A stretch of DNA of 64,000 nucleotides from Macrostomum lignano (lineage: Eukaryota). Positions 587-64,000 of the stretch are shown piece by piece. Position numbers and translations under genes: made by a program. The stretch is taken from assembly GCA_002269645.1 (NCBI GenBank), contig NIVC01002131.1, positions 62,001 through 126,000 of the forward strand, given 5' to 3'. Every line of letters starts with the position of its first letter. The first letter of the stretch is position 1. The notes below the pieces were generated by a model. That model was given only the letters and a program-made list of their open reading frames with translations, searched no databases and was not told the DNA's origin.

Positions 587-2837
<2,251 letters not shown>

Positions 2838-3052
2838 TGAGAACTGTTTTTGTACGAGAGCATAAAGACGCCACAGTTACGATTCGCGCAAAGATTTCGC
2901 TTTTGTATTACGTTAAAGGGGTTTTACCATAGATAAACGGAAGGAGGTAAACTCTTTTAAAAATAGTACACAATTTCCAAATGCCTCTAAATCTCCTGAC
3001 GACATTAAGTGTGATTAAAACTAAGCCTGTGTTTTTGACAGAAAATTAGCTA

Positions 3053-4656: not shown

Positions 4657-4663
4657 CCAACAG

Positions 4664-14139: not shown

Positions 14140-18348
<4,209 letters not shown>

Positions 18349-22720: not shown

Positions 22721-23178
22721 ACTGTTGATTATTGCTTTTTTCAGCTTGATTGCCTGTAATTAAAGATGAACGCATAAGCACCACTTAGTTTTATTACAGT
22801 GCACACAGCTTTGACGGGAGTGCGCTGCGCTTATCTTAGTCTTAAGACTGCGGGCTGGTGAAGGGCAATGAAATAAGCCGAAAACCGAGTCCTCGACCCT
22901 CTGTCCTTATCTCTTTCAGGCTTCGTCCTTCTCTCCTATTTGGTTAGGAAGGGTGTACATTTGGACAGACCCCTCCCCCACACCCATAGAGTTCGTAACA
23001 AACCGTACATTGCCGTCCTTTGCCGTGAATGTACATTGACGATAAGGGAATGGGGGCTAGAGAAAAGTTCTATTTTCTGCCAAGCGAAAAAATAACCGCT
23101 TCTGATACGAATACATGTAATAAGCCTAAGGAGATTAAGTAAGACGATAAAACTAATTTTTGGTTAAGGTCAATGGTT

Positions 23179-42989: not shown

Positions 42990-43061
42990 TGACACTCTTG
43001 GTGGCTGACTGGAAGGGCGGATCAGCTTAATTAATGCAAACAGACTGCGCGTTTATCAAAA

Positions 43062-43490
43062 CCACTGATTCCATGGTCTATCCCACTGATTCCACAGTCT
43101 ATCCCACTGATTCCACAGTCTATCCCACTGATTCCATGGTCTATCCCACTGATTCCACAGTCTATCCCACTGATTCCACAGTCTATCCCACTGATTCCAT
43201 GGTCTATCCCACTGATTCCACAGTCTATCCCACTGATTCCACAGTCTATCCCACTGATTCCACAGTCTATCCCACTGATTCCATGGTCTATCCCACTGAT
43301 TGCATGGTCTATCCCACTGATTCCACAGTCTATCCCACTGATTCCATGGTCTATCCCACTGATTGCATGGTCTATCCCACTGATTCCACAGTCTATCCCA
43401 CTGATTCCACAGTCTATCCCACTGATTCCACAGTCTATCCCACTGATTCCACAGTCTATCCCACTGATTCCACAGTCTATCCCACTGATT
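43062..43490. repeat. 21-bp minisatellite (CCCACTGATTCCACAGTCTAT)n just upstream of the SMG6 start
   Basis: About 20 units; YPTDSTV ORF. Confidence 0.95.
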
Positions 43491-44129
43491 TCGACAACCT
43501 ACAAGCGGCGAATAAAGAAAGATTTAAGAGAAGTCGCTAGGTACACACTATAAACGCGACAATCAACCGACAAACAAATAATCGCGAAGCTCCAAAACTG
43601 AACTGGTATTGAATAATTGTGTTCCAAAATTAACTCTTTAAAAAAACGCAGGTCTGTTAACAAAAAAGCTCTTTAAAAACACAGTTTAGGGGGATAAAGT
43701 ATAAGCCAGGGGCTTGCAGCTGAGCTTCACACATATATTACAGACAACAGACACTCTCTAGTACATACAAGGACAGAATACCGAAATTGCAATAGGAAAA
43801 ATTGCACTTACACAGAACGCCACCGCCGACTATACATCGAACGCGATTTGAGTTTTTTTGTAATTTATTCTGAAGCAACAACGTAGAAAAAGAGAAAAAG
43901 ACAAAAAACTGCCGACAAAGAATGAACAAAGAGCTGATAAAAGTGGAGCGCTGCACTGACACGGGCTGTGCGGTGGGCGCGAGGCAAGGACTAGACAGGG
44001 GGGCCGCAAATCGGGCTGGGATCACAGAGTACCGATACAAAACTCTCGTGAGATTGCCATTTGCTGCTAACAGCTGTGTACAAGTGTTCAGAGAGCGACT
44101 ACAAAACTGATGCGAAACAAACGGGTCCA

Positions 44130-44965: not shown

Positions 44966-45000
44966 CACAGACAGACAGACAGACACACAGACAGACAGAA
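44130..45000. repeat. Compound (CAGA)/(CA) microsatellite downstream of NF1
   Basis: Mixed ACAG and AC units over ~870 bp. Confidence 0.97.
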
Positions 45001-45665
45001 AAACACAGGCAGTATAGCTGCTTGATGAAGCCAGTTCAGTGACAGAAACGCAGCATTGCACTCAGGGCCACAAGGTGAATGCAGCAAAGAAATTGAGGCA
45101 ACAGTCAATTAGGAAAAATCAATAACAAACAAAACAATAAAAAATGCAGAAAACTTTTCTGGGTTAAAGCAAACAACAAAACGGCAAAAAAACATGTCAC
45201 AGTCAATGAAATGAGGGCAAAAAATTGTGCGAATAAAAATGATAAACTTGACGATTTTAATACCTCATTATCAACAGCAGATTAATATCTAGATAATCGA
45301 CAGAAGCTCAATAAATAAAAATAGGTTAAAAACGAAAAGCCGCATTTCAGACACAACACTGGCATTGGCGCAGGCAAGAAACACAACAAAATAATTTGAA
45401 ACACTGGGGTGAAACACACAATTAATTGGCGCTGCGCATTCAAGCTACTTAAAGTAGTGTGCAGATTAGCACGATTTTGACGCTGTCAGTATAGCAAAAA
45501 TATCGAAAAACGCTAATCAGACTACTGAGATGAAATTTTCGCTCTCGATATTAAAAAAAGCCAATCGAACTATTCTACTTAGGCAGTAGCTTGAGTGCTT
45601 TTTATTATTATAATTGTTTTTTTTACCAATAAATTGTGCGCAAATTTCTCCAAAAAAACAAAATT

Positions 45666-46410
45666 TCAACCGCACGATTCGTTTTCAACAGGATCTGGCG
45701 CGTCGGCAGCCTCGTCATCTCGGCTGATCTGCACTAGCGGTGGTGGCAAAGGTCGAGACTGCGACTGCTGCTGTTGCAACGCTCCGGTACGTGGTCGGGA
45801 AAAATTCGACGCCTGGCCTACACTGGGACCGTCTGAGTTCAAAGCGCTGTCAGCTGCAGCAGCTGAAATATCGATGGTTTACGGAAGTATACATAAATAT
45901 CGTCAATATGATTATTTTCGATTCATATCGGCAAGCCGTACTTTTTCATATAGTAATGCAGTATATTTTGTAGAATACTTTCGATACATATCGGCAAGCT
46001 GTACTTTTTCATTTAATAATGTAGGCTATATTTTAGTATACTTTCGATACATATCGGCAAGTTGTACTTTGCAATATAACAATGCAAGTACTACCTGCTC
46101 GCTGGTTGGTTCTATCTGTTGGACTCTGCAAGCTGCCTACGCTGGGGCTGGACAGGGAGCTCGACAGGTTGCAGCCGCCGCTGCCTCCGCTGGCCGCCAG
46201 GCTCAGCACGCCGGGAAAAGTCGGATTGCCGCCGCCGCTGCGCCCGGATTCTGAGTCGTCTGAAGGCAGGCAGGTCTCGACCATGGCCTCCAGCAGGTTG
46301 ACGAAATGCTCAGCATGGCCCTTGTTCTGGTTAGCCTGACAGTTTTGTAGCGGGTTACGAATAGTGCGGCCCACATAGGACTGAATACTGGATTCAGTGA
46401 AACTCGCCTA

Positions 46411-46453
<43 letters not shown>

Positions 46454-46478
46454 GCCTGCCTGCCTGTCTGTCTTAGTT

Positions 46479-46545
<67 letters not shown>

Positions 46546-46548
46546 GCC

Positions 46549-46601
<53 letters not shown>

Positions 46602-46604
46602 TGG

Positions 46605-46667
<63 letters not shown>

Positions 46668-46676
46668 ATGTCTGTC

Positions 46677-46738
<62 letters not shown>

Positions 46739-49700
46739 GGTCTGTCTCTGTCTGTCTGTCTGTAGCCACACCCACAGAAACAAGCCAACTCTGCTCAACC
46801 CCTCACCTTAGTAAACTGGCCGGAAAAGCGCCACAGACCGCCAAATCCGATGCTCTGCAAGTAACTGAGCTGCTGCTGCGACGGCTCCTCAGTGCAGAGC
46901 ATGTTCTGAATAATACTGTGCACTGCATTTAGTATTACATAATCGTGACAATTAGACAGAACATTGTTGATCTTGGCGTCAATCAGTGAATAACTAAAAA
47001 ATTGAAAAGAAAGAAACGCATTCGAAGATCCTGCAAACTGAAACAATTCAATCATAGCTCACGACTCACATGACGGGGAACACCTTGGAAAATACGACGC
47101 TTGCCTCGGCCAGATATTCGTATAGAATTTGAGACTCGTTCTCGTCAGTTGTGTTGCGCACCAGGGTCACCTGCGAGTTTTAGGTATTTTAAGGCGGATT
47201 AATGAGGCTTGCAAGATTAGGCTGGCCACGAACAACTTTTACCCCTCTGCCTAGGGAGTGTACATTGGCCACAAGCATCTCTTACCCCTCTGTCTAGGGA
47301 GTGTACATTGGCCACAAGCACCCTCTGTCTAGGGAGTGTACATTGGCCACAAGCACCCTCTGTCTAGGGAGTGTACATTGGCCACAAGCATCTCTTACCC
47401 CTCTGTCTAGGGAGTGTACATTGGCCACAAGCATCTCTTACCCCTCTGTCTAGGGAGTGTACATTGGCCACAAGCATCTCTTACCCCTCTGTCTAGGGAG
47501 TGTACAATGGCCACAAGCACCCTCTGTCTAGGGAGTGTACATTGGCCACAAGCATCTCTTACCCCTCTGTCTAGGGAGTGTACAATGGTCACAAGCATCT
47601 CTTGTCCCTCTGCCCAGGAAGTGTACACTGAAAGCCCCAACTAACCAGCACAGCCAGCATCAAAGCCTGGGTTCGCTCGTCTCTGATAACCTCCGCATTT
47701 AACAGCACGTTGTCGTCGTGACTGGCAGCAGTTGCAGACGCCGCTGGCGCACCGGCGCGGTCACCCATTCCCGACACCGCCGACTGGCCATTGTTGTTGC
47801 CAACGAAGCCGCTGGCACCAGCAGACGACGTCGACGTCGGCGGAGGCGGCGGGGCGGCGGCGGGGGCGGCTGAACGGGGGCTGGCGGCGGCTGCTGAGGC
47901 GAATTTCGAGCATCAACGCTGCGCGTCCTTGGCGGAAGGCCGCCGCAGCCGCTGCCGCTACCGGCACCGAGGCTGCCAGAGGCTCCGCCGGCGCCAACAG
48001 TGGCGCGCTGCGATTTCAACACGGCGCGCTGAGTCTGAATGTCAATCTCAAAGCTTTTCCACAATTTCATATTGGACGCGGTTGCCATGCCGACTGGGAG
48101 CACTGGGGATAGGAAATTAGCCTACACAGCCAGGGGAATGAAGGTGAAGAAGAGTGAGAGTGAGTGAGTGTACGACATTCGGCTATGCATAGCACAGCTA
48201 TTGTTGCGAAACACAAAATGGCTACTATATATAAATAAACACATTGGCTACACGTAAACAGGATTTAAGCGGGGACTATGTATCCACATGTATCTAGTAT
48301 ATCCATTCACAGGTTTACTAATTCTATTAAATTTATACCATCTTTTACATTCTGTTTTCCGTCTTGTGTTTCATACAGAAAGTCAGAATAACATGCTTAA
48401 GCCACACAGCACTACAGATACTAAAATAACTAGATATGCAACTTTTAACTTAAGGATGAAGAGCATCTACTCTTTTCAGTAGTTTGTTTGCACAGTATCG
48501 CTTATAAGTTCAATGTGGCAGACAAAAAGTTCCTTTCCTTCCTCCGGGTTAACAGCCTCAGGACCACATGGGGTTAAGAATGAACAACAAGCATTGAACC
48601 TCAATGTACACAAGTGAAGGCAAGACGGACAAAACTCAGCCTAGTGGGCAGGCCCAATCTAGCTCAGCCAATGAGAGACAGTGAGGAGACAGCTAGTGGG
48701 CAGGCCTAATCTAGCTCAGCCAATGAGAGAGTAGTAAGGAGACAGCCTAGTGGGCAGGCCTAATCTAGCTCAGCCAATGAGAGAGCAGTAAGGAGACAGC
48801 CTAGTGGGCAGGCCCAATCTAGCTCAGCCAATGAGAGACAGTAAGGAGACAGCTAGTGGGCAGGCCTAATCTAGCTCAGCCAATGAGAGACAGTAAGGAG
48901 ACAGCCTAGTGGGCAGGCCCAATCTAGCTCAGCCAATGAGAGAGCACTGGATTTGGGTGCAGTGCAGCTTCAAACAGATGCGAATTTTATGGGTCTGCTT
49001 GTAGAAAGCAAAAGTATGACTTTTGTCTACGGTTGTATCCACCACAAAACCCAAGCTCACTATGTTCACGTGATTCAGACTTTCCGCTAAGACACCTGCT
49101 TTAAGTAAACAAAAAAAACGGTCTAAATAGAATGCAATGGTATAAAATATCTATTAAAATTCCTGTTACCTAACACTAGAATTATTACATAAGCTTACAA
49201 AGCTCATAGTTCGACTGGTTATCACTAATGAGTGCAATACACCTATAACAATGGGATGCCAATGGGATAGGACACACAGTTTCGGAGCATACAGCACGTG
49301 AGAGACAATATTGTAAACACAAATGACTAAAAGCATTATAAGAACGAAAGGGCTGATCACACGTCGAAATATAGAATCGCACAGCAATTTCTAAATAAAA
49401 ACATAAAACGATAAAATATACTACTTAAACCAATATCCACCAGTAGTATTATCTATGCTAGATAATTTTAATTAGCCAAGAAGTGACTCGGAAGCGCGCT
49501 GGTTTCACGGTTTCTGCCGCATCCAAAAAACTTTTGATTTTGCGGCAGAAACTTAAATACTGCAGCCAAGCACTACTTATAGTAACAAGATGCAAAATAG
49601 GCATAAAGTGTGGTAAATTAGCAAGACAGACACGTTTTAAATTTGTGCCTAATTTAAATAACTATCCCAGCTCTTAAGCGAGCGTTTATTTGATTATTTA

Positions 49701-52700
49701 ATTTTTGTTTTTGTTATTCTGACAAAAAACTACTTAACAAAAATTAAAAGTTCTTCAAAATAATTATAGATTCTAAAATAATTTTTAAACTACTTCCATC
49801 ATTACTAGGGTTAAGCTAAAGTAGAGAAATTAAAATAGAAGTATTACTCTCTACATCGCTCTTCACTCCTCTCTAGATCGCTCATCCCCTCCTTCTAGAT
49901 CGCTGATCCCCTCTCTCTAGATCGCTGATCCCCTCTCTCTAGATCGCTGATCCCCTCTCTCTAGATCGCTGATTCCCTCTCTCTAGATCGCTGATCCCCT
50001 CTCTAGATCGCTGATCCCCTCACTCTAGATCACTGATCCCCTCTCTCTAGATTGCTGATCCCCTCTCTTTAGATCGCTGATCCCCTCTCTCTAGATCGCT
50101 GATCCACTCTCTCAAGATCGCTGATCCCCTCTCTCTAGATCGCTGATCCCCTCTCTAGATCGCTGATCCACTCTCTCTAGATCGCTGATCCCCTCTCTCT
50201 AGATCGCTGATCCCCTCTCTCTAGATCGCTGATCCCCTCTCTCTAGATCGCTGATCCCCTCTCTAGATCGCTGATCCACTCTCTCTAGATCGCTGATCCC
50301 CTCTCTCTAGATCGCTGATCCCCTCTCTCTAGATCGCTGATCCACTCTCTCTAGATCGCTGATCCCCTCTCTCTAGATCGCTGATCCCCTCTCTCTAGAT
50401 CGCTGATCCCCTCTCTCTAGATCGCTGATCCCCTCTCTAGATCGCTGATCCCCTCTCTCTAGATCGCTGATCCACTCTCTCTAGATCGCTGATCCCCTCT
50501 CTCTAGATCGCTGATCCACTCTCTCTAGATACTGATGAAGTGTCGTTTGAGTCGTGACAGTCACAGGGTACGTGGCCTGGATCTGGCATATACACGAACA
50601 TATAATTGTGTTAAAAATGTGTTAGGGCTAGAACAGGTGCTGATAGGGCTGGAACTCGGGCGGCACGGGTTTTCGCTCCAGCACCTTAGCGATGGGATAT
50701 TCCTCATCAATGTCGGGCTGGTAGGACACTGACGTGCCCGCAGACGGTCGCCAGGGCAGGTCAAGGGTCCGATTGTACAGCCGGTCGAAGTCGATGCCGC
50801 TGAACCAGGCGTAGAACCTGGCGGTGCGGCGGTCCGGCCGGCAGCCCGGCTCGCACAGCAGGCAGTCTTCGACGAAGTCGCGCGCCTCAGGCGACGGCAC
50901 CGGCCGCTTCACCGGCGGCGGCGCGGCGGCGGCGGCCATTTTGGCGGCGGACGTTGACGGAGCCTGTCCGCTGATCGCTTGGGCGTCTGATCGATGGGGG
51001 CGGAGAAAGCTAAATGATATCCTATGTAGGGATTACAGAGTTGTCCATATAGATATCTTTTAGATATCCATATATAGACCACATGCAGATCCTTTACAGA
51101 TATCCCATAGATATCGCTTATACGTAGAGATTCAATATACCGGTAGAGATCCTATACAGAGATCCCATATAGATATCCCACATAGAGATCCCACATAAAG
51201 ATCCCATTTAGAGATCCCATATATAGATATCCCACAAAAAGATCCCATATAGAGATCCCATATAAATACCCACATAAAGATCCCATATAGATATCCCATA
51301 AAGATCCCATATAGAGATGCCATATAGAGATCCCACATATAGATCTCATACAGATTCCATATAAAGATGCCATATAGAGATTCTATATAGAGATCCCATA
51401 CAGATATTAAGTAAAAAAATAGCATAGATATCCCAAAGAATTCCATAGGCTATCCTCATACAGAAATCCCACATCCCAAAACCGCAGATGTTTCAACTGA
51501 TGCAGTCTGATCCTCACCCAGCAGCCGCTGAGTGAGCCGGCGCCGATGCTCCTCAGCGGCCAGCGCCTCGGGCAGCAGGCCCCAGTCCACGCGGCCGTCG
51601 GCATCAAAAACGTCCTCCTGTTCGCAGAAGCACTCCTGCCTGAGCAGTTCGTACAGCACCAGGCCGAGTGCGTAAAAATCTACGGGACAGCCGTAGCCTG
51701 CAATTGAATGCATGTACAGTGTGCACACACAGTGCTTCAAGACCAATAGGAGGCTGCTACACTCTGACTCTCTACTGGAAACACTGTCTTCAGGTGTAAG
51801 TCTTATTTCACAATTAGGTCAAAGCTCTTCATAATTGAATCTAATTTATGTCCAACGTCTACTGTCTATCGAATTAGGTCTACTCTCGGTCTAATTAGGT
51901 TTATTCTGTCTAATTAGCTCTGCTCTCTGTCTAATTAGGTCTACTCTTTCTAATTACATGTAGGTCTACTCTTTCTAATTACATGTAGGTCTACTTTGTC
52001 TAATTACATGTAGGTCTACTTTGTCTAATTACATGCAGGTCTACTCTTTCTAATTACATGTAGGTCTACTTTTTCTAATTACATGTAGGTCTACTCTGTC
52101 TAATTACATGTAGGTCTACTTTTTCTAATTACATGTAGGTCTACTCTATCTAATTACATGTAGGTCTACTCTGTCTAATTACATGTAGGTCTACTCTGTC
52201 TAATTACATGTAGGTCTACTCTGTCTAATTACATGTAGGTCTACTCTGTCTAATTACATGTAGGTCTACTCTTTCTAATTACATGTAGGTCTACTCTTTC
52301 TAATTACATGTAGGTCTACTCTTTCTAATTACATGTAGGTCTACTCTTTCTAATTACATGTAGGTCTACTCTTTCTAATTAGGTCTGCTCTTTCTAATTA
52401 GGTATGCCCTTTCTAATTAGGGCTGCTCTTTCTAATTAGGTCTGCCCTTTCTAATTAGGTCTGCTCTTTCTAATTAGGTTTACACAGTCTAATTAGGTCT
52501 GGTTTTTGGCTAATTAGGTCTTCTCTTTCTAATTAGGTCTACTCTGTCTAACTAGGTTTACTCTGCCTTATTGGATCTACCTTTTCTATTTAGGTCTACT
52601 TTGTCGATTCAAGTCTATTTTCTGCATATTTAGGTCCACTCTTCTGCCCTAAGCTTCAACTAAAAGGCATTTCAAGCGAGTCAGCAGGACCCCAGCCGCG

Positions 52701-55700
52701 CACCTTTGCCATTAAAGTACTCAGGCGCCGCGTAGTACCGAAAACACGTGACATCGCGCAACGGCTGCCCATCCTCCGGCAGCACAGCCGTGATGGCAAA
52801 GTCGGTGAGCTTCACGTAGCCCCTGGCGTCGACAAGCAGATTAGCGGATTGAACGTCGCGATGCACACAGCCAACGCAGTGCAGGTACTCCAGGGCCAGC
52901 ACCGTCTGGGCAGCGATCGCTCTGATGGCGTCCTCCTGCGGGACGCAAATGTTGGGGGGGGGGCGTTGAAGCTCCTTCTTGATCAGATTGTCACTAAACA
53001 TCCCGGCTTAATCCCCATCGGATTAGTGTGATTTATTTTAACCTAGATGATTTCATATTAGAGTTTGTTATCATCTTCGGCTTAGGTTAGTCCATAGCGG
53101 CTTAGTTTCATCCATATCAGCTTAGCTTAATCCATATCGGCTTAGCTTAATCCATATCAGCTTAGCTTAATCCATATCAGCTTAGCTTAATCCATATCAG
53201 CTTAGCTTAATCCATATCAGCTTAGCTTAATCCATATCAGCTTAGCTTAATCCATATCAGCTTAGCTTAATCCATATCAGCTTAGCTTAATCCATATCAG
53301 CTTAGCTTAATCCATATCAGCTTAGCTTAATCCATATCGGCTTAGCTTAATCCATATCAGCTTAGCTTAATCCATATCAGCTTAGCTTAATCCATATCGG
53401 CTTAGCTTAATCCATATCAGCTTAGCTTAATCCATATCGGCTTAGCTTAATTCATATCAGCTTAGCTTAATCCATATCAGCTTAGCTTAATCCATATCGG
53501 CTTAGCTTAATCCATATCAGCTTAGCTTAATCCATATCAGCTTAGCTTAATCCATATCGGCTTAGCTTAATCCATATCGGCTTAGCTTAATCCATATCAG
53601 CTTAGCTTAATCCATATCAGCTTAGCTTAATCCATATCGGCTTAGCTTAATCCATATCAGCTTAGCTTAATCCATATCGGCTTAGCTTAATCCATATCAG
53701 CTTAGCTTAATCCATATCGGCTTAGCTTAATCCATATCAGCTTAGCTTAATCCATATCGGCTTAGCTTAATCCATATCAGCTTAGCTTAATCCATATCAG
53801 CTTAGCTTAATCCATATCGGCTTAGCTTAATCCATATCAGCTTAGCTTAATCCATATCAGCTTAGCTTAATCCATATCAGCTTAGCTTAATCCATATCAG
53901 CTTAGCTTAATCCATATCAGCTTAGCTTAATCCATATCAGCTTAGCTTAATCCATATCAGCTTAGCTTAATCCATATCAGCTTAGCTTAATCCATATCAG
54001 CTTAGCTTAATCCATATCAGCTTAGCTTAATCCATATCAGCTTAGCTTAATCCATATCAGCTTAGCTTAATCCATATCAGCTTAGCTTAATCCATATCAG
54101 CTTAGCTTAATCCATATCAGCCTAGCTTAATCCATATCGGCTTAGCTTAATCCATATCAGCTTAGCTTAATCCATATCGGCTTAGCTTAATCCATATCAG
54201 CTTAGCTTAATCCATATCAGCTTAGCTTAATCCATATCGGCTTAGCTTAATCCATATCAGCTTAGCTTAATCCATATCAGCTTAGCTTAATCCATATCAG
54301 CTTAGCTTAATCCATATCGGCTTAGCTTAATCCATATCGGGCTGGCTTAATCCATATCGGCTTAGCTTAATCCATATCAGCTTAGCTTAATCCATATCAG
54401 CCTAGCTTAATCCATATCGGCTTAGCTTAATCCATATCAGCTTAGCTTAATCCATATCGGGCTGGCTTAATCCATATCGGCTTAGCTTAATCCATATCGA
54501 CTTAGTTGAATAAACTCACCTTAAAATTGCTAACAATCCTATTGTCCTCATTTTTTTCATAATAATCCAACAGAGTTCCGTGCGGAAACTCCTCGAGAAA
54601 GACGCCAAAGTTGCAGTAGGCGTCAGTAAAGAAGCCCAGCCCGCTGCGCACAAACGGATGGTCGAAGGCGAACAGCAGCTGCCGCTCTGTCAGGCAGGCT
54701 CGAATCTGGCGCTCAAACTCGCCAGCCTTGAAGCCCAGAGCGGTGAGGTTAAAGTGCACCCGGCTGCAGGTGACTATCTTGCACCGGTAGAGGGTGCCGG
54801 TCTTGCGGCTGCGGAATAGAGGACAAACCGCGTGGTGGCCTGTGGAAGGTTGATGAGATAGTTCCTCATGGTTATAGCAAATTAAAAAAGAAGTAACCCA
54901 CAGATAACACAGAAAATTCCAATTAATCCCTGGCTCAGAGTACCAATTAAATCCTGGCTCAGAGTGCCAATTAAATCATGGCTCAGAGTACCAATTAAAT
55001 CCTGGCTCAGAGTACCAATTAAATCATGGCTCAGAGTACCAATTAAATCATGGCTCAGAGTACCAATTAAATCATGGCTCAGAGTACCAATTAAATCATG
55101 GCTCAGAGTACCAATTAAATCCTGGCTCAGAGTGCCAATTAAATCATGGCTCAGAGTGCCAATTAAATCATGGCTCAGAATGCCAATTAAACCCTGGCTC
55201 AGAGTGCCAATTAAATCATGGCTCAGAGTACCAATTAAATCCTGGCTCAGAGTGCCAATTAAACCCTGGCTCAGAGTACCAATTAAATCCTGGCTCAGAG
55301 TGCCAATTAAATCATGGCTCAGAGTACCAATTAAATCCTGGCTCAGAGTGCCAAATAAACCCTGGCTCAGAGTGCCAATTAAACCCTGGCTCAGAATGCC
55401 AATTAAATCCTGGCTCAGAGTGCCAATTAACCCTGGCTCAGAATGCCAATTAAATCATGGCTCAGGGTGCCAATTAAATCCTGGCTCAGAGTGCCAAATA
55501 AACCCTGGCTCAGAGTGCCAATTAAATCCTGGCTCAGAATGCCAATTAAATCCTGGCTCAGGGTGCCAATTAAATCCTGGCTCAGAGTGCCAATTAAATC
55601 CTGGCTCAGAGTGCCAATTAAATCCTGGCTCAGAGTGCCAATTAAATCCTGGCTCAGAGTGCCAATTAAATCATGGCTCAGAGTACCAATTAAATCTCGA

Positions 55701-58700
55701 TACAGTTAAAGCCGCTCACCTTTTCGAATAGTGTCCTCACGTTCAGCCAGCGCCCATTCGGACCAATTGATGCGGCCGAGCGGGCAGTGCTCAGCGTACT
55801 CAGCATAGGGAATCGCCATCCGCTGGCGGAACGCCCCCGGCCAGACCGAGTCTTCAAGCTGGCGATAGCTGGCCGGCTTGGCGCCCACCAGCTGGGCGGC
55901 CGGGACACGCAGATTCGGCTGAGGCCGGCTGGGCTCTTCGCCATCGTCCTCGTCATGGCAACTGGCTACGGCTGGTTGGCTTTTGATTACTGTACATTCT
56001 GCGGGGGTGGATTACAGATGCTCAAACCTGAAGACCGCTCTTCACCTCTATCTAGACCGCTCTTCTCCTCTATCTAGACCGCTCTTCTCCTCTATCTAGA
56101 CCGCTCTTCTCCTCTATCTAGACCGCTCTTCTCCTCTATCTAGACCGCTCTTCTCCTCTATCTAGATCGCTCTTCCCCTCTCTCTCTCTAGATCACTCTT
56201 CCCCTCTCTCTCTAGATCGCTCTTCACCTCTATCTAGACCGCTCTTCTCCTCTATCTAGACCGCTCTTCTCCTCTATCTAGACCGCTCTTCTCCTCTCTC
56301 TCTCTAGATCGCTCTTCCCCTCTCTCTCTCTAGATCACTCTTCCCCTCTCTCTCTAGATCGCTCTTCACCTCTATCTAGACCGCTCTTTACCTCTATCTA
56401 GACCGCTCTTCACCTCTATCTAGATCGCAATAAAAGCAGCAAATTACCATTCTCTACGCCCGAGTCTCCGTGGCAGTTGGCAGCAGTAGCAGAAGCAGTC
56501 GACAATTTTGACGTCTCATCCAGAAGGCTATCCTGGTTGTCGCTGGCGCTCAATCCGCTCATTTTATCACTTAAAGTTCTTTGATCAGTTTATTGTATTT
56601 GCTAAGCAGAGTAGAAGCACAGATTCTATATACTCCTAGATGGACCACTCCAGCAGCCTGGCCGCAGAGCGAAAACCCAGGGGTTCAGACCATAGACTAT
56701 AGCTTCTGCTGTGCTGCTCTCAAGCCTTAGCACTCGGAGGAAACCACTTGAAAAGCATTCGAATCTGACTGACATGGTCGCAGCCAATGTCTGTGGCCCT
56801 AACCTCGGGGTTTTTCGGGGCCTCAGAGACGGCCGCTAAATATGTATGACTGCAAATAAGCTATCCAGGCTATAAATAGTTGTTAGCTGCGCTTCAGCGA
56901 GGCTTGCGAGTCACCATGGCAACTACAGTGTATGATAAACATGAGCACATACAAGCGGGCAAATACAGTACTCAGGCACGCACTTGTACACACGCTCACA
57001 CAGGGTGTACAGCAGCCCTTTGACTTTCCAATCGTCAGACATGTACACTTTCTGTGCCTTGGGGCTTGGCTCTGATGGCTGTGCATCGCACGACAACTCC
57101 CCCCGGCCAATTTTTGAGCACAAAAGCCCCAAATGAATGCGGTCGCGAGGGGAACCGAACCAGGAACCAGGGGGGGGGGGGGGAGTCAGATGCGTTCACC
57201 GCTGCAGAGCCGCTCTTACCCTCACCATGACAACTAATTAACAAAACAAATTTCAACAAACTTGAAACAATAATTGCTACTCATAAATAGTTAGAAAAAA
57301 TGAGCAAACAGAACCGATTAAGAGTCCAAGTGAAAAGTGCAGCTGGGTTACTATGCAGGGAACATGGAACGGAAAGCACAAACTAACACAAGTGCGCGAA
57401 CAATTAAAAGGTAAAATCGGTGATTCAATTAGTTAAAATAAACACAAATTGCAATGTAGGAAAATGGGAACAAAAAACACAAAGCTAAAGCAGACAACAA
57501 AATGTAATTTAAAAAACACACACACACAAGTACACACAGATACCAACAGATAGTGGAGGCTTTGATGTTTTGACCAATTTAATGCTTGCTTCGAATTAAC
57601 AAGGCTGTTCGGACAAGTTGGTCATGAAAAATCTACTACAGAATGAAATTCAGGCAATTATTTTTTAATCGCCAATCGAGTAATTGCGGGGACTTCCGCA
57701 TGGCAACCGGTCGCAGCTCGCGCAATAACAGAGAAAATTAAACAGGTAAAATTAGTTGACAAAAAGGTGTAAAAAATAAGTTAAACTAGTCCATCCTTAT
57801 TTCATTCGATTTCAGTTTTATTTCAATATCTAATCTACAAGCCTTCTAATTTGATTTGATAGGTAGACAGAGGGATGAGATGGGTTGGGTAGGGAGCGGA
57901 CAGGTGGGTAGACTACAGACATAAGTGGGTAGATTGTGTAGATATGGGTAGGTAGCGGAGGTTGGTAGATAAATGGCGGACAGAGGTGGTTAGATAGTGG
58001 GCAGAGGTGGGCGGGCAAAGGTGGGTAGATAGCGGAGAGGTGGGTAGATAGCGAACAAAGGTGGGTAGATAGCGAACAGAGGCGGATAGATAGCGAACAG
58101 AGGCGGATAGATAGCGGACAGAGGCGGGTAGGTAGCGGGCCGAGGCGGGTAGATAGCGGAGAGGTGGGTAGATAGCGGACAGAGGCGGATAGATAGCAAA
58201 CAGAGGCGGATAGATAGCGGACAGAGGCGGATAGATAGCGAACAGAGGCGGATAGATAGCGGACAGAGGCGGATAGATAGCGAACAGAGGCGGATAGATA
58301 GCGAACAGAGGCGGATAGATAGCGAACAGAGGCGGATAGATAGCGGACAGAGGCGGATAGATAGCGAACAGAGGCGGATAGATAGCGGACAGAGGCGGAT
58401 AGATAGCGAACAGAGGCGGATAGATAGCGGATAGAGGTGTGTAGATAGCGGATAGAGGCGGGTAAATAGCGGACAGAGGTGGGTAGATAGCGGGCAGAGG
58501 TGGGTAGGTAGCGAACAGAGGCGGGTAGGTAGCGGACGGAGGTGGGTAGATAGCGAACAGAGGCGGATAGATAGCGAACAGAGGCGGATAGATAGCGGAC
58601 AGAGGCGGATAGATAGCGAACAGAGGCGGATAGATAGCGAACAGAGGCGGATAGATAGCGAACAGAGGCGGATAGATAGCGGACAGAGGCGGGTAGGTAG

Positions 58701-61700
58701 CGGGCCGAGGCGGGTAGATAGCGGAGAGGTGGGTAGATAGCGGACAGAGGCGGGTAGATAGCAGAAAAGGTGGGTAGATAGCTGCTTTTGATAGCTTTTA
58801 TCACCTGCAATAACTAATTATTTCATAATTAAATTGCTGACACAACAAAACTGGTCCAGAAGAGAAAACCTAATTGAATTAATTGAGCTAAAGAACTTAA
58901 TAGCCTAATTGTATGCGAAATTTACTGCTTAAATCTGATAGATCAATTTTAAGTCATTGTAGGCAGTGTCTATAGTGCGCTATATTATAATAAAAAGATT
59001 TGTTTAAACAGTAAACGCGGAAAGCGCCATTAACGTAGATGAAATTATTTTGTAAAAAATATTAAACAACTAAAACTTTGCAAACCGTAAACTAATTATA
59101 AAAGAAGACGCACCTGAGACAGCTGATAGGCCTGTTGCTTCTGGGCGACAGTCGGTCTGCCAGATGTGCCAGCAGCATCAGCTGGAGCTCCGCCGGCTGC
59201 TGCAGCTGCGGCGGCGTCGCAGCACTTCTGACGCACAACAACTGGACCAGCGGCAGAGTTAGAGAATGGTGAAGCTTGCGACGGCTGCTGTTGAAGCAGA
59301 GGCGGAGAAGAACTGTTGCCAAGGCCAGGCGAAACGGCTTGCAAATGCTGCTGCTGCTGCTGTTGCAGTTCGCTCACACTCTCCGTTGAATTGCTTTCAA
59401 CAACCATTGCTCCCATCATCTGGCAGGCTGGATTGTGCAGCGGCGGGATGGGATGCAAATTGGCAATGCATGACTCGAAGATTTAGTATATGTTGACTAG
59501 CCACTTTCGCACCCCCTTCGAGTGGTCTAAATAACCCGATCAAAACGATTGACCAATCTGATCTATTTTTGCTTTTAGCCCTTGAACAGTATTTTTAGTG
59601 GAAAAGAATCGCCAGTGGGGGGTAAAGTTAAGCAAAACGGGCGCGGTTAGTACGCAACTGAATAGGGCTCATATTATCAGTTATTACAGTACTGTAGTAC
59701 GTCTACTAGTACGAATTCAAGATATTAGTACATACAATACAATGTATAGCGCTTACGCTTGACATGAAATCGAAGATGGCAGCGGCTGCGGACTTCCTCG
59801 GAGACGGCGACCAGGGCGGTTAGGTAAGCCACGCTGTTTGGCGTCACCTCGTATTTGTCTCTATTATTGGGCGATTCAGAATTAGAATAGAAAAGTATTA
59901 AGATAATAACAATTTACTTATCGCACTACTTAATCCAGATGAGCAGTAGTGCAATACGCGCATTATTCTGTTATTAACTAACCGCTTCTCCGGCTTGGCC
60001 ACGATAGACAGTAGCATGGATAGAACTCGAATTGTGCGCGACAGAGTTTTAGGACTGGGATGGCGGAAACCCTTCAACAGGTGGCCAACTAGGGCGAAGT
60101 GAAAATTCTCGCGGAATGACAGGCCGACACAGTTGTCCAGCTGTTTGTAAGAGATGTGCAGGATTAGCGGCTGCCGGTATTCCATCATTATGCTCTCCAA
60201 TGAGCGATCGGTGAACATGCCTGGAAAATTTGTATTGGCAGACAGGGGAGCGGAGCTTTGTAACATGCTGTTTTATGGAGATCTAAGAATGCAGCTAGTG
60301 AGGTATGACCCTAGTTGCTATGACACCAGTTGTTATGACTAAAGTTGCTATGACACCAGTTGTTATGGCTAAAGTTGCTATGACACCAGTTGTTATGGCT
60401 AAAGTTGCTATGACACCAGTTGTTATGGCTAAAGTTGCTATGACACCAGTTGTTATGACTAAAGTTGCTATGACACCAGCTGTTATGACTAAAGTTGCTA
60501 TGATACCAGTTGTTATGACTAAAGTTGCTATGACACCAGTTGTTATGACTAAAGTTGCTATGACACCAGTTGTTATGACTAAAGTTGCTATGACACCAGC
60601 TGTTATGACCAAAGTTGCTATGATACCAGCTGTCATGACCAAATTTGCTATAACACCAGCTGCTATGACCTCACTTGCGATTCTATGACCATGATCACTA
60701 ACAGCAATGAGTACTGGGCCCAGTTTTGATAATTGAAATAACTAAAAAACACGCAGGTAAGCAAATTCTCACCCTGATTATCGAGATTGTCCAAGCTCTG
60801 CTCTAGCAGGGCCAGTCCGGCAGCGTACAGGCTGACCTCGTCCAACTGCAGCACGCACAGGGCAATCCAGAAGATGTGCTTATGTATTGGCGAGTTCGGG
60901 TTCAACAGCGGCAGCAGGCGAGTCACCGACATTATAGTAGCTTCGATTAGCGTCAGGTCGGAGTTCCACTGCGACTCGACGCCCCTGTGCATGCGGACGT
61001 CCTTGTCGATGACTTCGAGGTCGCGCGCGTAGCTCTCTAGCGATTTGACCATGATTCGCAGCAGATGCTTGATCTCGTTCTCCGATACGGACTTGGAGAT
61101 GCAGCCGAGTACAATGATTGCGCGGTACTGCAGCGCCGGATTGTGCTGGAAAGCGAATCTCTTGGCTAGCTGGGTCCACTGCTCCAGCCAGTTGCAGTTC
61201 GGGATGTCCTTCATCACGGCTGCGAGAGGACGGGGCGATGATTAGCCAGTATGCTGAGCAGTGTGGGATTTGCGACACTGAGCAGTGTGGGATTCGGACA
61301 GTGAGCAGTGTGGGATTTGGGACACTGAGCAGTGTGGGATTTGCGACACTGAGCAGTGTGGGATTTGCGACACTGAGCAGTGTGGGATTCGGGACAGTGA
61401 GCAGTGTGGGATTTGGGACACTGAGCAGTGTGGGATTTGCGACACTGAGCAGTGTGGGATTTGCGACACTGAGCAGTGTGGGATTTGGAACAGTGATTAG
61501 TGTGGGATTTGGGACACTGAGCAGTGTGGGATTTGGGACACTGAGCAGTGTGGGATTTGGGACAGTAAGCAGTGTGGGATTCGGGACAGTGAGCAGTGTG
61601 GGATTTGGGACACTGAGCAGTGTGGGATTTGGGACACTGAGCAGTGTGGGATTTGGGACAGTGATTAGTGTGGGATTTGGGACACTGAGCAGTGTGGGAT

Positions 61701-62852
61701 TTGGCACACTAAGCAGTGTGGGATTTGGGACAGTAAGCAGTGTGGGATTCGGGACAGTGAGCAGTGTGGGATTTGCGACACTGAGCAGTGTGGGATTTGG
61801 GAAAATGAGCAGTGTGGGATTTGGGACAATGAGCAGTGTGGGATTTGGCACACTAAGCAGTGTGGGATTTGGGACAGTAAGCAGTGTGGGATTCGGGACA
61901 GTGAGCAGTGTGGGATTTGCGACACTGAGCAGTGTGGGATTTGCGACACTGAGCAGTGTGGGATTTGGGACAATGAGCAGTGTGGGATTCGAGACAGTGA
62001 GCAGTGTGGGATTTGGACACTGAGCAGTGTGGGATTTGGGACAGTAAGCAGTGTAGGATTCGGGGCAGTGAGCAGTGTGGGATTTGGGAAAATGAGCAGT
62101 GTGGGATTTGGGACAATGAGCAGTGTGGGATTCGAGACAGTGATTAGTGTGGGATTTGGGACACTGAGCAGTGTGGGATTTGCGACAGTGAGCAGTGTGG
62201 GATTTGGGACAGTGATTAGTGTGGGATTGGGACACTGAGCAGTGTGGGATTCGGGACAGTGAGCAGTGTGGGATTCGGGACAGTGAGCAGTGTGGGATTT
62301 GGGAAAATGAGCAGTGTGGGATTTGGGACAATGAGCAGTGTGGGGATTTGGGACACTGATCAGTGTGGGGATTTGGGACACTGAGCAGTGTGGGGATTTG
62401 TGACAATGAGCAGTGTGGGATTTGGGACAATGAGCAGTGTGGGATTGGGACAATGAGTGTGAACTTTGGGTGAAAATGATAACACTGACAAGTGTGGGAT
62501 TTCTGGTCTTTACCATTGCAATTATTAAAGACAAATATCAAATCATTCTCACCCGACAGAACTTCCAGCAGGGTGTCAGTGAGCAGTTCCAGACTGCTCA
62601 ATGGCAGCCGTTCGGCACTATGCACCGAAGAAGAAGTGTTGCCGGAGGCGGCGGCAGCAGCAGCGGCAGCGGCAGCGGCGGCAGCTGCAGCTGCAGATGC
62701 GGTCTCGCCGGCGCTGGAGACGGTCCGCTCGCCTGACTTGGTACGGAAAGCGCTCACTGCGGCGCTTTTAATAGAAGAGATGCCGAATACCTGGTAGTAC
62801 TCGGTCAGGGTGAACTCGGTCAGGTAATGCTTTAGGTGGTGCAAGGTGCTCT
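45666..62852 (-). CDS. NF1: Neurofibromin, C-terminal half (5' part lies beyond the window). Exons 62852-62553, 61219-60773, 60220-59983, 59860-59757, 59427-59114, ~48100-47646, 47170-47070, 46993-46807, ~46380-46096, 45862-45666
   Basis: [27 protein letters not shown]; [21 protein letters not shown]; [25 protein letters not shown]; [18 protein letters not shown]; [17 protein letters not shown]; [18 protein letters not shown]; [15 protein letters not shown]; [10 protein letters not shown]. All match the NF1 C-terminal region. Acceptors near 48100 and 46380 are uncertain; apparent 1-nt deletion near 47852. Confidence 0.95.
46410..46762. repeat. (GTCT)n microsatellite in an NF1 intron
   Basis: Nearly pure run. 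Confidence 0.97.
47240..47630. repeat. 43/35-bp minisatellite (CCTCTGTCTAGGGAGTGTACATTGGCCACAAGCATCTCTTACC)n in an NF1 intron
   Basis: About 9-10 units in two length classes. Confidence 0.93.
48639..48945. repeat. ~53-bp tandem repeat carrying CAGCCAATGAGAG motifs
   Basis: 6 units AGCCTAGTGGGCAGGCCYAATCTAGCTCAGCCAATGAGAG... Confidence 0.92.
49850..50530. repeat. ~22-bp minisatellite (CTAGATCGCTGATCCCCTCTCT)n just 3' of the nested kinase
   Basis: About 30 units. Confidence 0.95.
50628..56562 (-). CDS. Divergent AGC-family (PKA/PRKX-like) kinase or pseudokinase nested in an NF1 intron, 6 exons (56562-56448, 55998-55720, 54839-54520, 52935-52704, 51697-51518, 50986-50628), ~494 aa
   Basis: YRCK (beta3 Lys), [69 protein letters not shown] tail [21 protein letters not shown]. 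All five introns are GT-AG with compatible phases and no internal stop. Confidence 0.85.
51050..51440. repeat. Degenerate GATCCCATATA-based repeat in kinase intron 5
   Basis: Short imperfect units. Confidence 0.8.
51890..52560. repeat. 25-bp minisatellite (AGGTCTACTCTTTCTAATTACATGT)n in kinase intron 4, flanked by 20-bp variants
   Basis: Tandem units with and without the ACATG insert. Confidence 0.92.
53105..54505. repeat. 1.4-kb 20-bp minisatellite (CTTAGCTTAATCCATATCAG)n in kinase intron 3
   Basis: About 70 units with A/G dimorphism. Confidence 0.98.
54925..55695. repeat. 24-bp minisatellite (CCAATTAAATCCTGGCTCAGAGTG)n in kinase intron 2
   Basis: About 32 units; [11 protein letters not shown]. 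Confidence 0.96.
56035..56425. repeat. ~22-bp minisatellite (CTAGACCGCTCTTCTCCTCTAT)n in kinase intron 1
   Basis: About 17 units. Confidence 0.93.
57990..58780. repeat. 21-bp minisatellite (GATAGCGGACAGAGGCGGATA)n in the large NF1 intron
   Basis: RYLSASV-periodic ORF. Confidence 0.95.
60305..60670. repeat. 30-bp minisatellite (TATGACACCAGTTGTTATGACTAAAGTTGC)n in an NF1 intron
   Basis: About 12 units. Confidence 0.95.
61250..62460. repeat. 24-bp minisatellite (GAGCAGTGTGGGATTTGGGACACT)n in an NF1 intron
   Basis: About 50 units. Confidence 0.96.
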
Positions 62853-63024
62853 CTGTGTTGGGACATAGCGGAGGCGAAATGTTGTTAAAGAGTAGTTAGG
62901 TAAACGGCTTTTTATTGTGTTTGTATATTCTTAACGAGATTGTAACGGATTATTCAACCTAATGGTTCTAAAAGGGTTTCCAAGCTGCTTTGAAAGATCG
63001 GGCGTTTGATTCTTTAGCGAATCA

Positions 63025-64000
63025 GGGCCGGCTAGATGGGGGATCAGGGTCGGCTAGATGGGGGATCAGGGTCGACTAGATGGGGGGATCAGGATCGACT
63101 AGATGGGGGGGGCGGATCAGGATTGACTAGATGGGGGATCAGGATTGACTAGATGGGAGCGGATCAGGATTGACTAGATGGGGTGATCAGGATTGACTAG
63201 ATGGGGGCGGATCAGGATTGACTAGATGGGGGGATCAGGATTGACTAGATGGGGGGCGGATCAGGATCAACTAGATGGGGGGATCAGGATCGACTAGAGA
63301 GGGGGGCGGATCAGGATCGACTAGATGGGGGGCGGATCAGGATCAACTAGATGGGGGATCAGGATCGACTAGATGGGGGCGGATCAGGATCAACTAGATG
63401 GGGGGATCAGGATCGACTAGAGAGGGGGCGGATCAGGATCGACTAGATGGGGGCGGATCAGGATCAACTAGATGGGGGGATCAGGATCGACTAGAATGGG
63501 GCGGATCAGGATCAACTAGATGGGGGGATCAGGATCGACTAGATGGGGGGGCGGATCAAGATCGACTGGATGGGGGATCAGGATCGACTAGATGGGGGCG
63601 GATCAAGATCGACTGGATGGGGGGATCAGGATCGACTAGATGGGGGGCGGATCAGGATCAACTAGATGGGGGCGGATCAGGATCAACTAGATGGGGGCGG
63701 ATCAAGATCGACTGGATGGGGGATCAGGATCGACTAGATGGGGGGCGGATCAGGATCAACTAGATGGGGGCGGATCAGGATCAACTAGATGGGGGGCGGA
63801 TCAAGATCGACTGGATGGGGGGATCAGGATCGACTAGATGGGGGGCGGATCAGGATCAACTAGATGGGGGCGGATCAGGATCAACTAGATGGGGTGGGGC
63901 GGATCAAGATCGACTGGATGGGGGGATCAGGATCGACTAGATGGGGGGTGGATCAGGATCAACTAGATGGGGGCGGATCAGGATCAACTAGATGGGGTGG
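63025..64000. repeat. ~22-27-bp G-rich minisatellite (GATCAGGATCGACTAGATGGGGG[GCG])n in an NF1 intron, runs off the window end
   Basis: Tandem units with variable G-runs. Confidence 0.95.

What the first reader, a model, noticed from the sequence alone, without database searches (positions are those of the whole stretch)
50628..56562. Complete six-exon kinase gene nested on the SAME strand inside an ~11-kb NF1 intron
Seen: NF1 exons flank it (59114 and ~48100). The kinase has its own ATG, five in-phase introns and a stop. Known: nested genes are usually antisense, and human NF1 hosts OMG/EVI2A/EVI2B antisense in a large intron. Inference: an independent nesting event in NF1. Same-strand nesting needs the NF1 spliceosome to skip six good exons and a poly(A) site, or else yields NF1-kinase chimeric or truncated isoforms. 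The link is intriguing because NF1 acts on the cAMP/PKA axis in Drosophila.
Basis: partly seen in the sequence, partly recalled or inferred. Interest (0 to 1): 0.75.

Follow-up and report, generated by a model that had tools for sequence, protein, structure and literature searches.

The report
Kinase gene nested inside NF1 intron
In the flatworm Macrostomum lignano, a complete PKA-like (probably catalytically impaired) kinase gene lies on the coding strand inside an 11-kb intron of the neurofibromin (NF1) gene, and an anciently duplicated second NF1 locus has the same layout; this is a real but fairly ordinary case of gene nesting that current annotations miss.

Summary
The window is identical to GenBank contig NIVC01002131.1 of Macrostomum lignano.

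**The kinase.** On the minus strand, 56562-50628 holds a six-exon, GT-AG, 494-codon gene. It is already annotated as hypothetical protein BOX15_Mlig009949g1.

**The host.** The flanking exons are consecutive parts of neurofibromin. The upstream side aligns to human residues 2350-2457 and the downstream side to 2599-2786. The kinase therefore sits, same strand, in a 10,992-nt NF1 intron (59113-48122).

**Not a mis-join.** Three near-identical contigs show the same layout. So does a paralogous NF1 locus with saturated synonymous divergence, carrying a 57%-identical kinase with the same intron positions. The nesting is old.

**The protein.** It is a Macrostomum-restricted relative of the PKA catalytic subunit. 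Its glycine loop is degenerate, and it has HRDvQ and DFA in place of HRDLK and DFG. It is under purifying selection.

**What is not shown.** No transcript evidence could be reached for the 59114→48121 NF1 splice, for chimeric isoforms, or for the kinase 5' end.

**Context.** Same-orientation nesting is common in mammals. M. lignano also has spliced-leader trans-splicing and operons, which offer an alternative route. This is a new member of a known kind, of modest interest, and useful mainly for correcting the NF1 annotation.

The parts
56448..56562 (-). Kinase exon 1 (ATG at 56562; donor AATG|GTAATT, phase 1)
   Evidence: The span matches the annotated 494-aa gene. An in-frame TAA lies 27 nt upstream of the ATG.
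55720..55998 (-). Kinase exon 2 (N-terminal extension, including a helix modelled like the PKA A-helix)
54520..54839 (-). Kinase exon 3 (degenerate G-loop RKGHHAVCP, beta3 Lys in YRCKIV, alphaC Glu); donor AAG|GTGAGT, phase 0
52704..52935 (-). Kinase exon 4 (HRDVQSAN catalytic loop, DFA, APE); acceptor CCCGCAG|GAG
   Evidence: The boundary is fixed by P0001, P0003 and P0004.
51518..51697 (-). Kinase exon 5
50628..50986 (-). Kinase exon 6, with the AGC-type C-terminal tail ending ...HLF and the stop codon (TAG, 50630-50628)
48122..59113 (-). Host NF1 intron (10,992 nt). It contains the kinase gene and several minisatellite arrays.
59114..59427 (-). NF1 exon E (low-complexity linker). Proposed acceptor TCCAG|CC (phase 1); donor CAG|GTGCGT (phase 0).
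   Evidence: A weakly similar ORF lies upstream of the paralogous kinase in L005.
59757..59868 (-). NF1 exon D (…[16 protein letters not shown])
59982..60221 (-). NF1 exon C (approximate, from the tblastn match)
60771..61226 (-). NF1 exon B (approximate, from the tblastn match)
62716..62853 (-). NF1 exon A (approximate, from the tblastn match)
47646..48121 (-). NF1 exon F (…[15 protein letters not shown] … [22 protein letters not shown]). It has a 1-nt deletion in a poly-C run near 47855 in this contig.
47070..47170 (-). NF1 exon G ([26 protein letters not shown]…)
46807..46993 (-). NF1 exon H
46095..46335 (-). NF1 exon I
45666..45862 (-). NF1 terminal coding exon J, with its stop codon
   Evidence: Homology is weak; it is supported by the paralog and by old M. 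lignano models.
56626..56632 (-). TATATAG about 65 nt upstream of the kinase ATG: a candidate core promoter (a lead only)
   Evidence: A similar TATATAG preceded by ATAGTCTATG lies upstream of the paralog in L005. This is not statistically significant.
49685..49690 (-). First canonical AATAAA downstream of the kinase stop (about 940 nt away, beyond a 22-nt repeat array): a candidate poly(A) signal

Best explanation
This is a genuine, evolutionarily old, same-strand nested gene.

Origin. A Macrostomum-restricted, divergent relative of the PKA catalytic subunit took up residence in the NF1 intron that interrupts the poorly conserved C-terminal linker of neurofibromin. This happened before an ancient duplication of the NF1 locus.

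The protein. It keeps the catalytic Asp, the Mg-binding Asn and Asp, the beta3 Lys and the alphaC Glu. It has lost the GxGxxG loop and the catalytic-loop Lys, so it is probably catalytically impaired or atypical.

Proposed mechanism (inferred, not shown). The kinase is made as its own monocistronic mRNA from a start site inside the intron, and it ends at its own poly(A) site. Full-length NF1 mRNA arises when polymerase reads through and the 59114 donor is joined to the 48121 acceptor, removing the whole 11-kb intron. Mis-splicing of the NF1 donor into kinase exons would mostly be out of frame, or would stop at once, and so would be unproductive.
For: - Gene structure and identity to a transcriptome-derived GenBank model. 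That annotation was built from RNA-seq assemblies (PMC5730564).
- NF1 exons on both sides are collinear and consecutive relative to human neurofibromin.
- Three contigs have the same layout.
- The paralogous locus L005 has an E-like ORF, then kinase-B, then NF1-B exons F-J on one strand.
- NF1 exons G+H between the two loci: dN 0.039, dS about 2.8. The exons downstream of the kinase are therefore translated and constrained in both loci.
- Kinase: omega about 0.12 between the recent copies. Between the old paralogs, exon 3 has dN 0.21 with saturated dS and the exon boundaries fall at the same aligned positions.
- The start codon, the stop codon and a PKA-like free C-terminus are conserved in all three family members.
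- The relative P0004 is represented by spliced RNA contigs with a 5' UTR of at least 176 nt that holds neither NF1 sequence nor the SL.
- Any cis-splice from 59114 into the two AGs just upstream of the kinase ATG meets a stop codon at once or within three codons.
- PKA-like fold and sequence.
Against: - No transcript joining 59114 to 48121 could be retrieved.
- The GenBank NF1 model stops upstream of this region, truncated by a frameshift in contig L002. Full-length NF1 is therefore inferred from homology and selection only.
- The 5' and 3' ends of the kinase mRNA are unknown. No poly(A) signal lies within about 900 nt of the stop.
- The promoter lead is not statistically significant.
- The paralog's locus tag is '...g2', meaning the second gene of a transcriptional unit. 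This hints at co-transcription with an upstream gene.
- In-frame cryptic junctions between NF1 and the kinase do exist.
Confidence: 0.6

Rival explanations
1. Operon-like processing. The kinase has no promoter of its own. Its mRNA is cut out of the NF1 primary transcript by spliced-leader trans-splicing at its 5' end and by polyadenylation at its 3' end. Each NF1 pre-mRNA then yields either NF1 or the kinase.
For: [quoted passage not shown] About 7% of assembled transcripts are multi-gene precursors that were cut into genes g1, g2 and so on (PMC5730564). The paralogous kinase is tagged Mlig014081g2. The orientation is the same and the arrangement is conserved.
Against: The window copy and its two homeologs are tagged g1 of their own units. 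No CAG, and so no [T/C]TNCAG acceptor motif, lies in the last ~95 nt before the ATG. The gaps to the NF1 exons (about 2.5 kb) exceed the 1-kb operon criterion, though repeats inflate them. RNA contigs of the relative P0004 carry at least 176 nt of non-SL 5' UTR.
Confidence: 0.2
2. Gene fission. NF1 is no longer one gene here. An N-terminal NF1 gene ends at exon E, the kinase follows, and the C-terminal ~330 residues are expressed separately. Their start would be the Met in exon F (MK[L/G]WKSF, conserved in both paralogs) or the AUG that ends the SL, trans-spliced at the phase-0 acceptor at 48121.
For: All existing annotations break NF1 at this point. The Met in exon F is conserved in both paralogs, whereas the other NF1 sequences retrieved have Q at that position. 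The SL ends in ATG, and the 48121 acceptor is phase 0. The break lies in a linker with no detectable similarity to human NF1.
Against: The annotation breaks are explained by frameshifts and assembly errors. Compatible donor/acceptor phases exist across the intron in both paralogs. In the metazoan NF1 sequences retrieved here, the regions on either side of the break sit in one polypeptide. There are no transcript data either way.
Confidence: 0.08
3. Chimeric protein. The kinase exons act as alternative terminal exons, or as an in-frame cassette of NF1, giving neurofibromin-kinase fusion proteins.
For: The 59114 donor is phase 0. An in-frame AG exists after kinase codon 10 (exon part starting at 56532), and an in-frame GT after codon 481 (donor after 50667) can join the 48121 acceptor. 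The UniProt models P0244 and P0005 use exactly these junctions. Kinase exon 3 (phase-0 donor) to NF1 exon F, and NF1 exon E to kinase exon 4 (phase-0 acceptor), would also be in frame.
Against: Those models come from an older, error-rich assembly and use weak cryptic sites: a purine-rich tract before the AG, and a GTGCCG donor. The transcriptome-based GenBank model is stand-alone. The kinase's own ATG, stop codon and PKA-like free C-terminal ...HLF/HLL are conserved. The P0004 mRNA is stand-alone. In-frame AG and GT sites are expected by chance.
Confidence: 0.07
4. Artefact. An assembly mis-join, or a dead gene copy, creates the appearance of nesting.
For: The assembly is PacBio-based, repeat-rich and redundant, and it has indel errors.
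Against: The same order and orientation occur in three contigs and in a paralogous locus with saturated synonymous divergence. The kinase ORF is intact with omega about 0.12. The NF1 exons on both sides are under strong constraint.
Confidence: 0.02

Closest known systems
Human NF1 intron 27b with its embedded genes OMG, EVI2A and EVI2B
   Same: The host gene is neurofibromin, and complete protein-coding genes lie inside one large intron.
   Different: Those genes are antisense to NF1, are compact with few exons, and lie in a mid-gene intron. Here the guest is in sense orientation, has six exons, and lies in the intron that splits the C-terminal linker (between human residues about 2457 and 2599). 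The two events are independent.
Same-orientation host/nested gene pairs of mammals (Genome Res 2024, PMC11694760)
   Same: A complete gene lies in a long host intron on the host's strand. Interplay through premature polyadenylation or splicing of the host is expected.
   Different: The organism is a flatworm with SL trans-splicing. No expression data are at hand. The arrangement is retained in two anciently diverged paralogous loci.
cAMP-dependent protein kinase catalytic subunit (PKA-C, AGC group)
   Same: PKA-C is the best sequence match among solved structures (E about 1e-20). It is also the best fold match (all top 50 hits, target-normalised TM 0.72-0.78). The shared features include an N-terminal helix and an AGC C-tail ending in an aromatic residue at the free C-terminus.
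   Different: About 20-30% identity. The G-loop GTGSFG is replaced by RKGHHA. The catalytic loop is HRDVQSAN rather than YRDLKPEN. DFA replaces DFG. There are a ~13-residue insert after beta3, a ~50-residue insert in the C-lobe and a ~130-residue N-terminal extension. No orthologue was found outside Macrostomum.
SL-resolved operons / multi-gene transcriptional units of M. lignano (PMC5730564, PMC8629364)
   Same: Same-strand genes are potentially transcribed as one precursor. The paralogous kinase carries a 'g2' tag.
   Different: Operon genes lie one after another, typically about 100 nt apart. Here one gene lies inside an intron of the other, 2.5 kb from either flanking exon. No SL evidence is available.

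Membership tests
Eukaryotic protein kinase superfamily (Pfam PF00069) | Significant match to the kinase-domain profile above the curated cut-off | tested here: met
   102.2 bits against a cut-off of 31.7, E=4e-29. Note that this scan used my first 519-aa model.
AGC group / PKA-C-like | Closest sequence and fold relatives are AGC kinases, and an AGC C-terminal tail follows the kinase core | tested here: met
   PKA, AKT and PKG are the top PDB sequence hits, and the tail [24 protein letters not shown] aligns to PKA residues 294-319. The Foldseek top 50 are all PKA-C.
AGC group / PKA-C-like | Orthology to PKA-C (reciprocal best hit, conserved regulatory-subunit interface) | not tested
   Only about 20-30% identity. 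No phylogeny was made.
Catalytically competent protein kinase | Glycine-rich loop GxGxxG | tested here: not met
   The loop is RKGHHAVC, with only the middle Gly kept. This is shared by all family members.
Catalytically competent protein kinase | beta3 Lys, alphaC Glu, HRD Asp, catalytic-loop Asn, DFG Asp | tested here: met
   K152, E183, D265, N270 and D283 are invariant, or nearly so, in alignments A2 and A4.
Catalytically competent protein kinase | Catalytic-loop Lys of Ser/Thr kinases (HRDLKxxN) and the DFG Gly | tested here: not met
   HRDVQSAN (Lys replaced by Gln) and DFA, in all three family members.
Nested (intronic) gene | The guest gene lies wholly between two consecutive exons of one host gene | tested here: met
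   The flanks align to consecutive parts of neurofibromin, with compatible phase-0 splice sites. The layout is repeated in the paralogous locus.
Nested (intronic) gene | A host transcript that splices across the guest | not testable with these tools
   No M. lignano transcript-derived protein spans the junction. No read data could be reached.
Neurofibromin (host) | Homology to NF1 across the C-terminal HEAT region, with RasGAP, Sec14 and PH domains upstream | tested here: met
   Human NF1 alignments with E=7e-30 and 3e-47. The annotated upstream part of the gene on homeologous contig L002 carries RasGAP, CRAL_TRIO_2 and PH_NF1. Those domains lie off this contig.
SL trans-spliced operon gene of M. 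lignano | An SL acceptor ([T/C]TNCAG) at the 5' end, and less than 1 kb (repeat-adjusted) to the upstream same-strand gene | tested here: inconclusive
   No CAG lies in the last ~95 nt before the ATG. The distance from the NF1 donor to the ATG is 2,551 nt, of which about 750 nt is a tandem repeat. No SL-read data are available.

The most novel reading that the evidence does not exclude
NF1 and its resident PKA-like pseudokinase form a conserved co-transcribed unit. It could be an 'operon inside an intron' resolved by SL trans-splicing, a split NF1, or in-frame NF1-kinase isoforms. Production of neurofibromin and of a PKA-pathway decoy would then be mechanically coupled. This would explain why the whole known kinase family is found only inside NF1 introns.
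Probability: 0.12. Interest if true: 0.65.

Novelty: new member of a known kind. Interest (0 to 1): 0.35.

Why it matters
**Annotation.** NF1 in the M. lignano reference is truncated at 2131 aa and its last ~700 codons are unannotated. UniProt holds chimeric NF1/kinase models. Recognising the nesting gives a correct full-length neurofibromin model for a regeneration and stem-cell model animal.

**Biology.** This is a clean, anciently conserved sense-strand host/guest pair in an organism with SL trans-splicing and with transgenesis available. It could therefore serve to test how sense-nested genes avoid or exploit interference with the host.

**The PKA-like nature of the guest.** It is suggestive given the NF1-cAMP/PKA genetics in Drosophila (from my own knowledge). 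Co-duplication of a host and its guest is the default outcome, however, so it is not evidence of a functional link.

Tried and rejected
- **My first model of intron 3 was wrong.** I used donor GTGA|GTTTAT with acceptor TTAAG|CC, which gave 519 aa. P0001, P0003 and P0004 show the real junction, AAG|GTGAGT … CCCGCAG|GAG.
- **Protein searches for a transcript-derived NF1 fragment spanning exons E and F.** They found only error-rich M. lignano models from an older assembly.
- **Exact look-up of the window's own 494-aa protein.** I reached the protein through its cluster member P0242 instead.
- **Literature search for the four locus tags.** Nothing was found.
- **BLAST for conserved non-coding blocks upstream of the two paralogous kinases, and against the P0004 5' UTR.** Nothing significant. 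There was only a shared TATATAG and a shared 10-mer, consistent with chance.
- **Rfam scan of 45000-64000.** No hits.
- **Pfam scan of ten other ORFs in and beside the intron.** No hits.
- **Profile search of 1.84 billion representative proteins for family members outside Macrostomum.** None were found.
- **Testing the in-frame cryptic junctions used by P0244 and P0005 against the paralog.** In-frame AGs are frequent, so this is not evidence.


Full report
**Identity of the window.** The window matches, with 0 mismatches over 23,373 compared bases, GenBank contig NIVC01002131.1 of the Macrostomum lignano Mlig_3_7 assembly, GCA_002269645.1. Window position w corresponds to contig position w+62000. 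The contig ends 1,835 nt beyond window position 64000, so the N-terminal bulk of NF1 is not on this contig.

**The kinase gene.** On the minus strand I reconstructed six exons: 56562-56448, 55998-55720, 54839-54520, 52935-52704, 51697-51518 and 50986-50628. All introns are GT..AG, with phases 1,1,0,1,1. The CDS is 1485 nt, 494 aa.
- My first guess for intron 3 was wrong. I corrected it with the homologues.
- The product matches Pfam Pkinase, E=4e-29.
- It differs at 4 residues from P0001 (PAA68955.1/PAA85016.1). The identical contig encodes the annotated 494-aa PAA60631.1 = BOX15_Mlig009949g1 over the same span.
- That annotation derives from a genome-guided RNA-seq transcriptome (PMC5730564). 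The gene is therefore expressed and is already catalogued as a hypothetical protein.

**The host gene.** A tblastn search with an NF1 C-terminal protein (P0122), together with a PDB sequence search, places NF1 exons on the minus strand on both sides of the kinase.
- Upstream exons lie at about 62853-62716, 61226-60771, 60221-59982, 59868-59757 and 59427-59114.
- Downstream exons lie at 48121-47646, 47170-47070, 46993-46807, 46335-46095 and 45862-45666.
- The upstream side aligns to human neurofibromin residues 2350-2457 (E=7e-30). The downstream side aligns to 2599-2786 (E=3e-47).
- The donor after 59114 (CAG|GTGCGT) and the acceptor before 48121 (GTGTAG|GCT) are both phase 0.
- The kinase therefore lies, in sense orientation, in a 10,992-nt intron. 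This intron interrupts the part of the C-terminal region that shows no detectable similarity to human NF1.
- Nothing else recognisable is in that intron. There were no Rfam hits and no Pfam hits in the other ORFs. There are several minisatellite arrays, including one in every kinase intron.

**Why current annotations miss this.**
- The GenBank NF1 model (2131 aa; RasGAP, CRAL_TRIO_2, PH_NF1) on homeologous contig L002 ends upstream of this region. A frameshift inside an exon truncates it. The same exon is open in L001.
- UniProt models from an older assembly break NF1 at the kinase. P0121 ends in exon E. P0244 joins the 59114 donor to a cryptic AG after kinase codon 10. P0005 joins a cryptic GT after kinase codon 481 to the 48121 acceptor. 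P0241 starts at a Met inside exon F.
- NF1 exon F has a 1-nt deletion in a poly-C run in the window. L002 has a different one, and L001 is intact. These are probably assembly indels.

**It is not a mis-join, and it is old.**
- Contigs NIVC01000352.1 (L001) and NIVC01001361.1 (L002) are collinear with window positions 64000 to about 40500 at about 93-99% identity. Both have the same NF1 / kinase / NF1 / SMG6-like order.
- The 57%-identical paralogous kinase (P0003/P0243, BOX15_Mlig014081g2) on NIVC01004360.1 (L005) is embedded in the same way. An exon-E-like ORF lies upstream of it (weak match, E=0.12). NF1 exons F-J lie 1.6-4 kb downstream on the same strand.
- NF1 exons G+H are 91-92% identical in protein between the two loci, with dN=0.039 and dS about 2.8, which is saturated. 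The duplication is therefore ancient, and the NF1 exons downstream of the kinase are translated and strongly constrained in both loci.
- The two kinases have six exons each, with boundaries at the same aligned positions. For exon 3, dN is 0.21 and dS is saturated. Between the recent copies there are 10 synonymous and 4 non-synonymous codon differences, omega about 0.12.
- The nesting therefore predates the old duplication, and both guests remain functional genes.

**What the kinase is.**
- The closest solved structures by sequence are PKA catalytic subunits (E about 1e-20), then AKT, PKG and STK32A.
- An AlphaFold model (pLDDT 79.9, pTM 0.79; residues 1-57 disordered) finds only PKA-C among the top 50 PDB folds, with target-normalised TM 0.72-0.78.
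- The beta3 Lys, alphaC Glu, HRD Asp, catalytic Asn, DFG Asp and APE are kept. The glycine loop is RKGHHAVC, the catalytic loop is HRDVQSAN (Lys replaced by Gln), and DFG is DFA. All three family members share these changes. I infer an impaired or atypical enzyme; this is not shown.
- A profile search of 1.84 billion representative proteins found the family only as the P0004 cluster plus M. lignano fragments. Everything else was a generic kinase match. As far as current data go, the family is restricted to Macrostomum, and both M. lignano family loci examined lie inside an NF1 intron.
- P0004 comes from two RNA-derived Logan contigs. They are 73-85% identical in DNA to the L005 exons, and the matches break at the L005 exon boundaries. 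This is a spliced mRNA of a related species or a deep paralog. Its 5' UTR of at least 176 nt holds neither NF1 sequence nor the spliced leader.

**How it probably works.**
- *Shown:* the gene structure, the nesting by homology, its conservation, and purifying selection on both partners.
- *Inferred:* the kinase is an independent mRNA with its own start inside the intron. NF1 is produced by read-through and removal of the whole intron.
- *In favour:* the conserved ATG, stop codon and free PKA-like C-terminus; the stand-alone transcriptome-based model, tagged g1; and the stand-alone P0004 mRNA. Also, the two AGs just upstream of the ATG would put a stop codon at once, or within three codons, after NF1 exon E.
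- *Against, or open:* no transcript data for the E→F junction were reachable. The kinase 3' end is undefined; the first AATAAA is about 940 nt past the stop, beyond a repeat array. The TATA-like lead is not significant.
[quoted passage not shown] Multi-gene precursors were cut into g1, g2 and so on using SL and poly(A) evidence (PMC8629364, PMC5730564). The paralogous kinase is a 'g2'. An operon-like origin from NF1 pre-mRNA is therefore a serious rival.
- *Less likely readings that are not excluded:* gene fission of NF1, and in-frame NF1-kinase chimeras.

**Comparison with what is known.**
- Host/nested pairs involve more than a tenth of mouse and human genes, and same and opposite orientations are 'broadly similar' in number. 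Nested-gene activity can cause premature polyadenylation of the host (PMC11694760). Sense nesting is therefore a known kind.
- The vertebrate NF1 case (OMG, EVI2A, EVI2B; antisense, in a different intron) is an independent event. That comparison rests on my own knowledge.
- The NF1-PKA connection is only an association. A duplicated host carries its guest along by default.

**Verdict.** This is a new member of a known kind and of modest interest. Its main immediate value is to correct the NF1 and kinase annotations. It also offers a tractable sense-nested pair in a trans-splicing animal.

Noticed in passing
window 47646-48121 (near 47855); L001:18051-18552; L002:17703-18203: NF1 exon F changes reading frame in a poly-C/proline-coding run in this contig. 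L002 has a different 1-nt deletion and L001 is open throughout. This is probably a homopolymer indel error of the assembly, not a pseudogene.
   Followed up: yes
L002:661-1055 (upstream of the window's range): The GenBank NF1 model (2131 aa) ends at a frameshift inside an exon that is intact in L001. About 700 C-terminal codons of NF1 are therefore unannotated in the reference.
   Followed up: yes
window 59114→56532 and 50667→48121: UniProt models from an older assembly (A0A1I8INE0 = P0244, and P0005) fuse NF1 and the kinase through in-frame cryptic splice sites. Together they would amount to a kinase inserted into neurofibromin. No transcript support is known to me.
   Followed up: partly
L005 (NIVC01004360.1) 650-11274: A second, anciently diverged NF1 locus carries its own nested paralogous kinase (Mlig014081g2). 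M. lignano therefore has two old NF1 paralogs. The NF1 exons at this locus are unannotated.
   Followed up: partly
window 49847-50530, 51144-51404, 51936-52597, 53080-54498, 54919-55696, 56032-56428, 58036-58782: Minisatellite arrays with periods of 13-25 nt fill every kinase intron and both flanks inside the host intron. Their copy number differs among the three homeologous contigs.
   Followed up: partly
window about 40570-43500 (minus strand): The next gene downstream of NF1 on the same strand is an EST1/PIN-domain (SMG6-like) gene. This is taken from the annotation of the homeologous contigs.
   Followed up: no
window 14286-17701 (minus strand): Long ORFs of 819 and 359 aa look like a non-LTR retrotransposon (reverse transcriptase plus endonuclease-like part). 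They were not analysed.
   Followed up: no
window 20922-22759 (minus strand): Cysteine-rich ORFs with repeated CxxC/CPxG motifs look like exons of a gene for an extracellular cysteine-rich repeat protein. They were not analysed.
   Followed up: no
window 5400-11330: A very large tandem array is readable as (TLRQ)n / (TDTK)n over about 6 kb, with strong AT skew.
   Followed up: no
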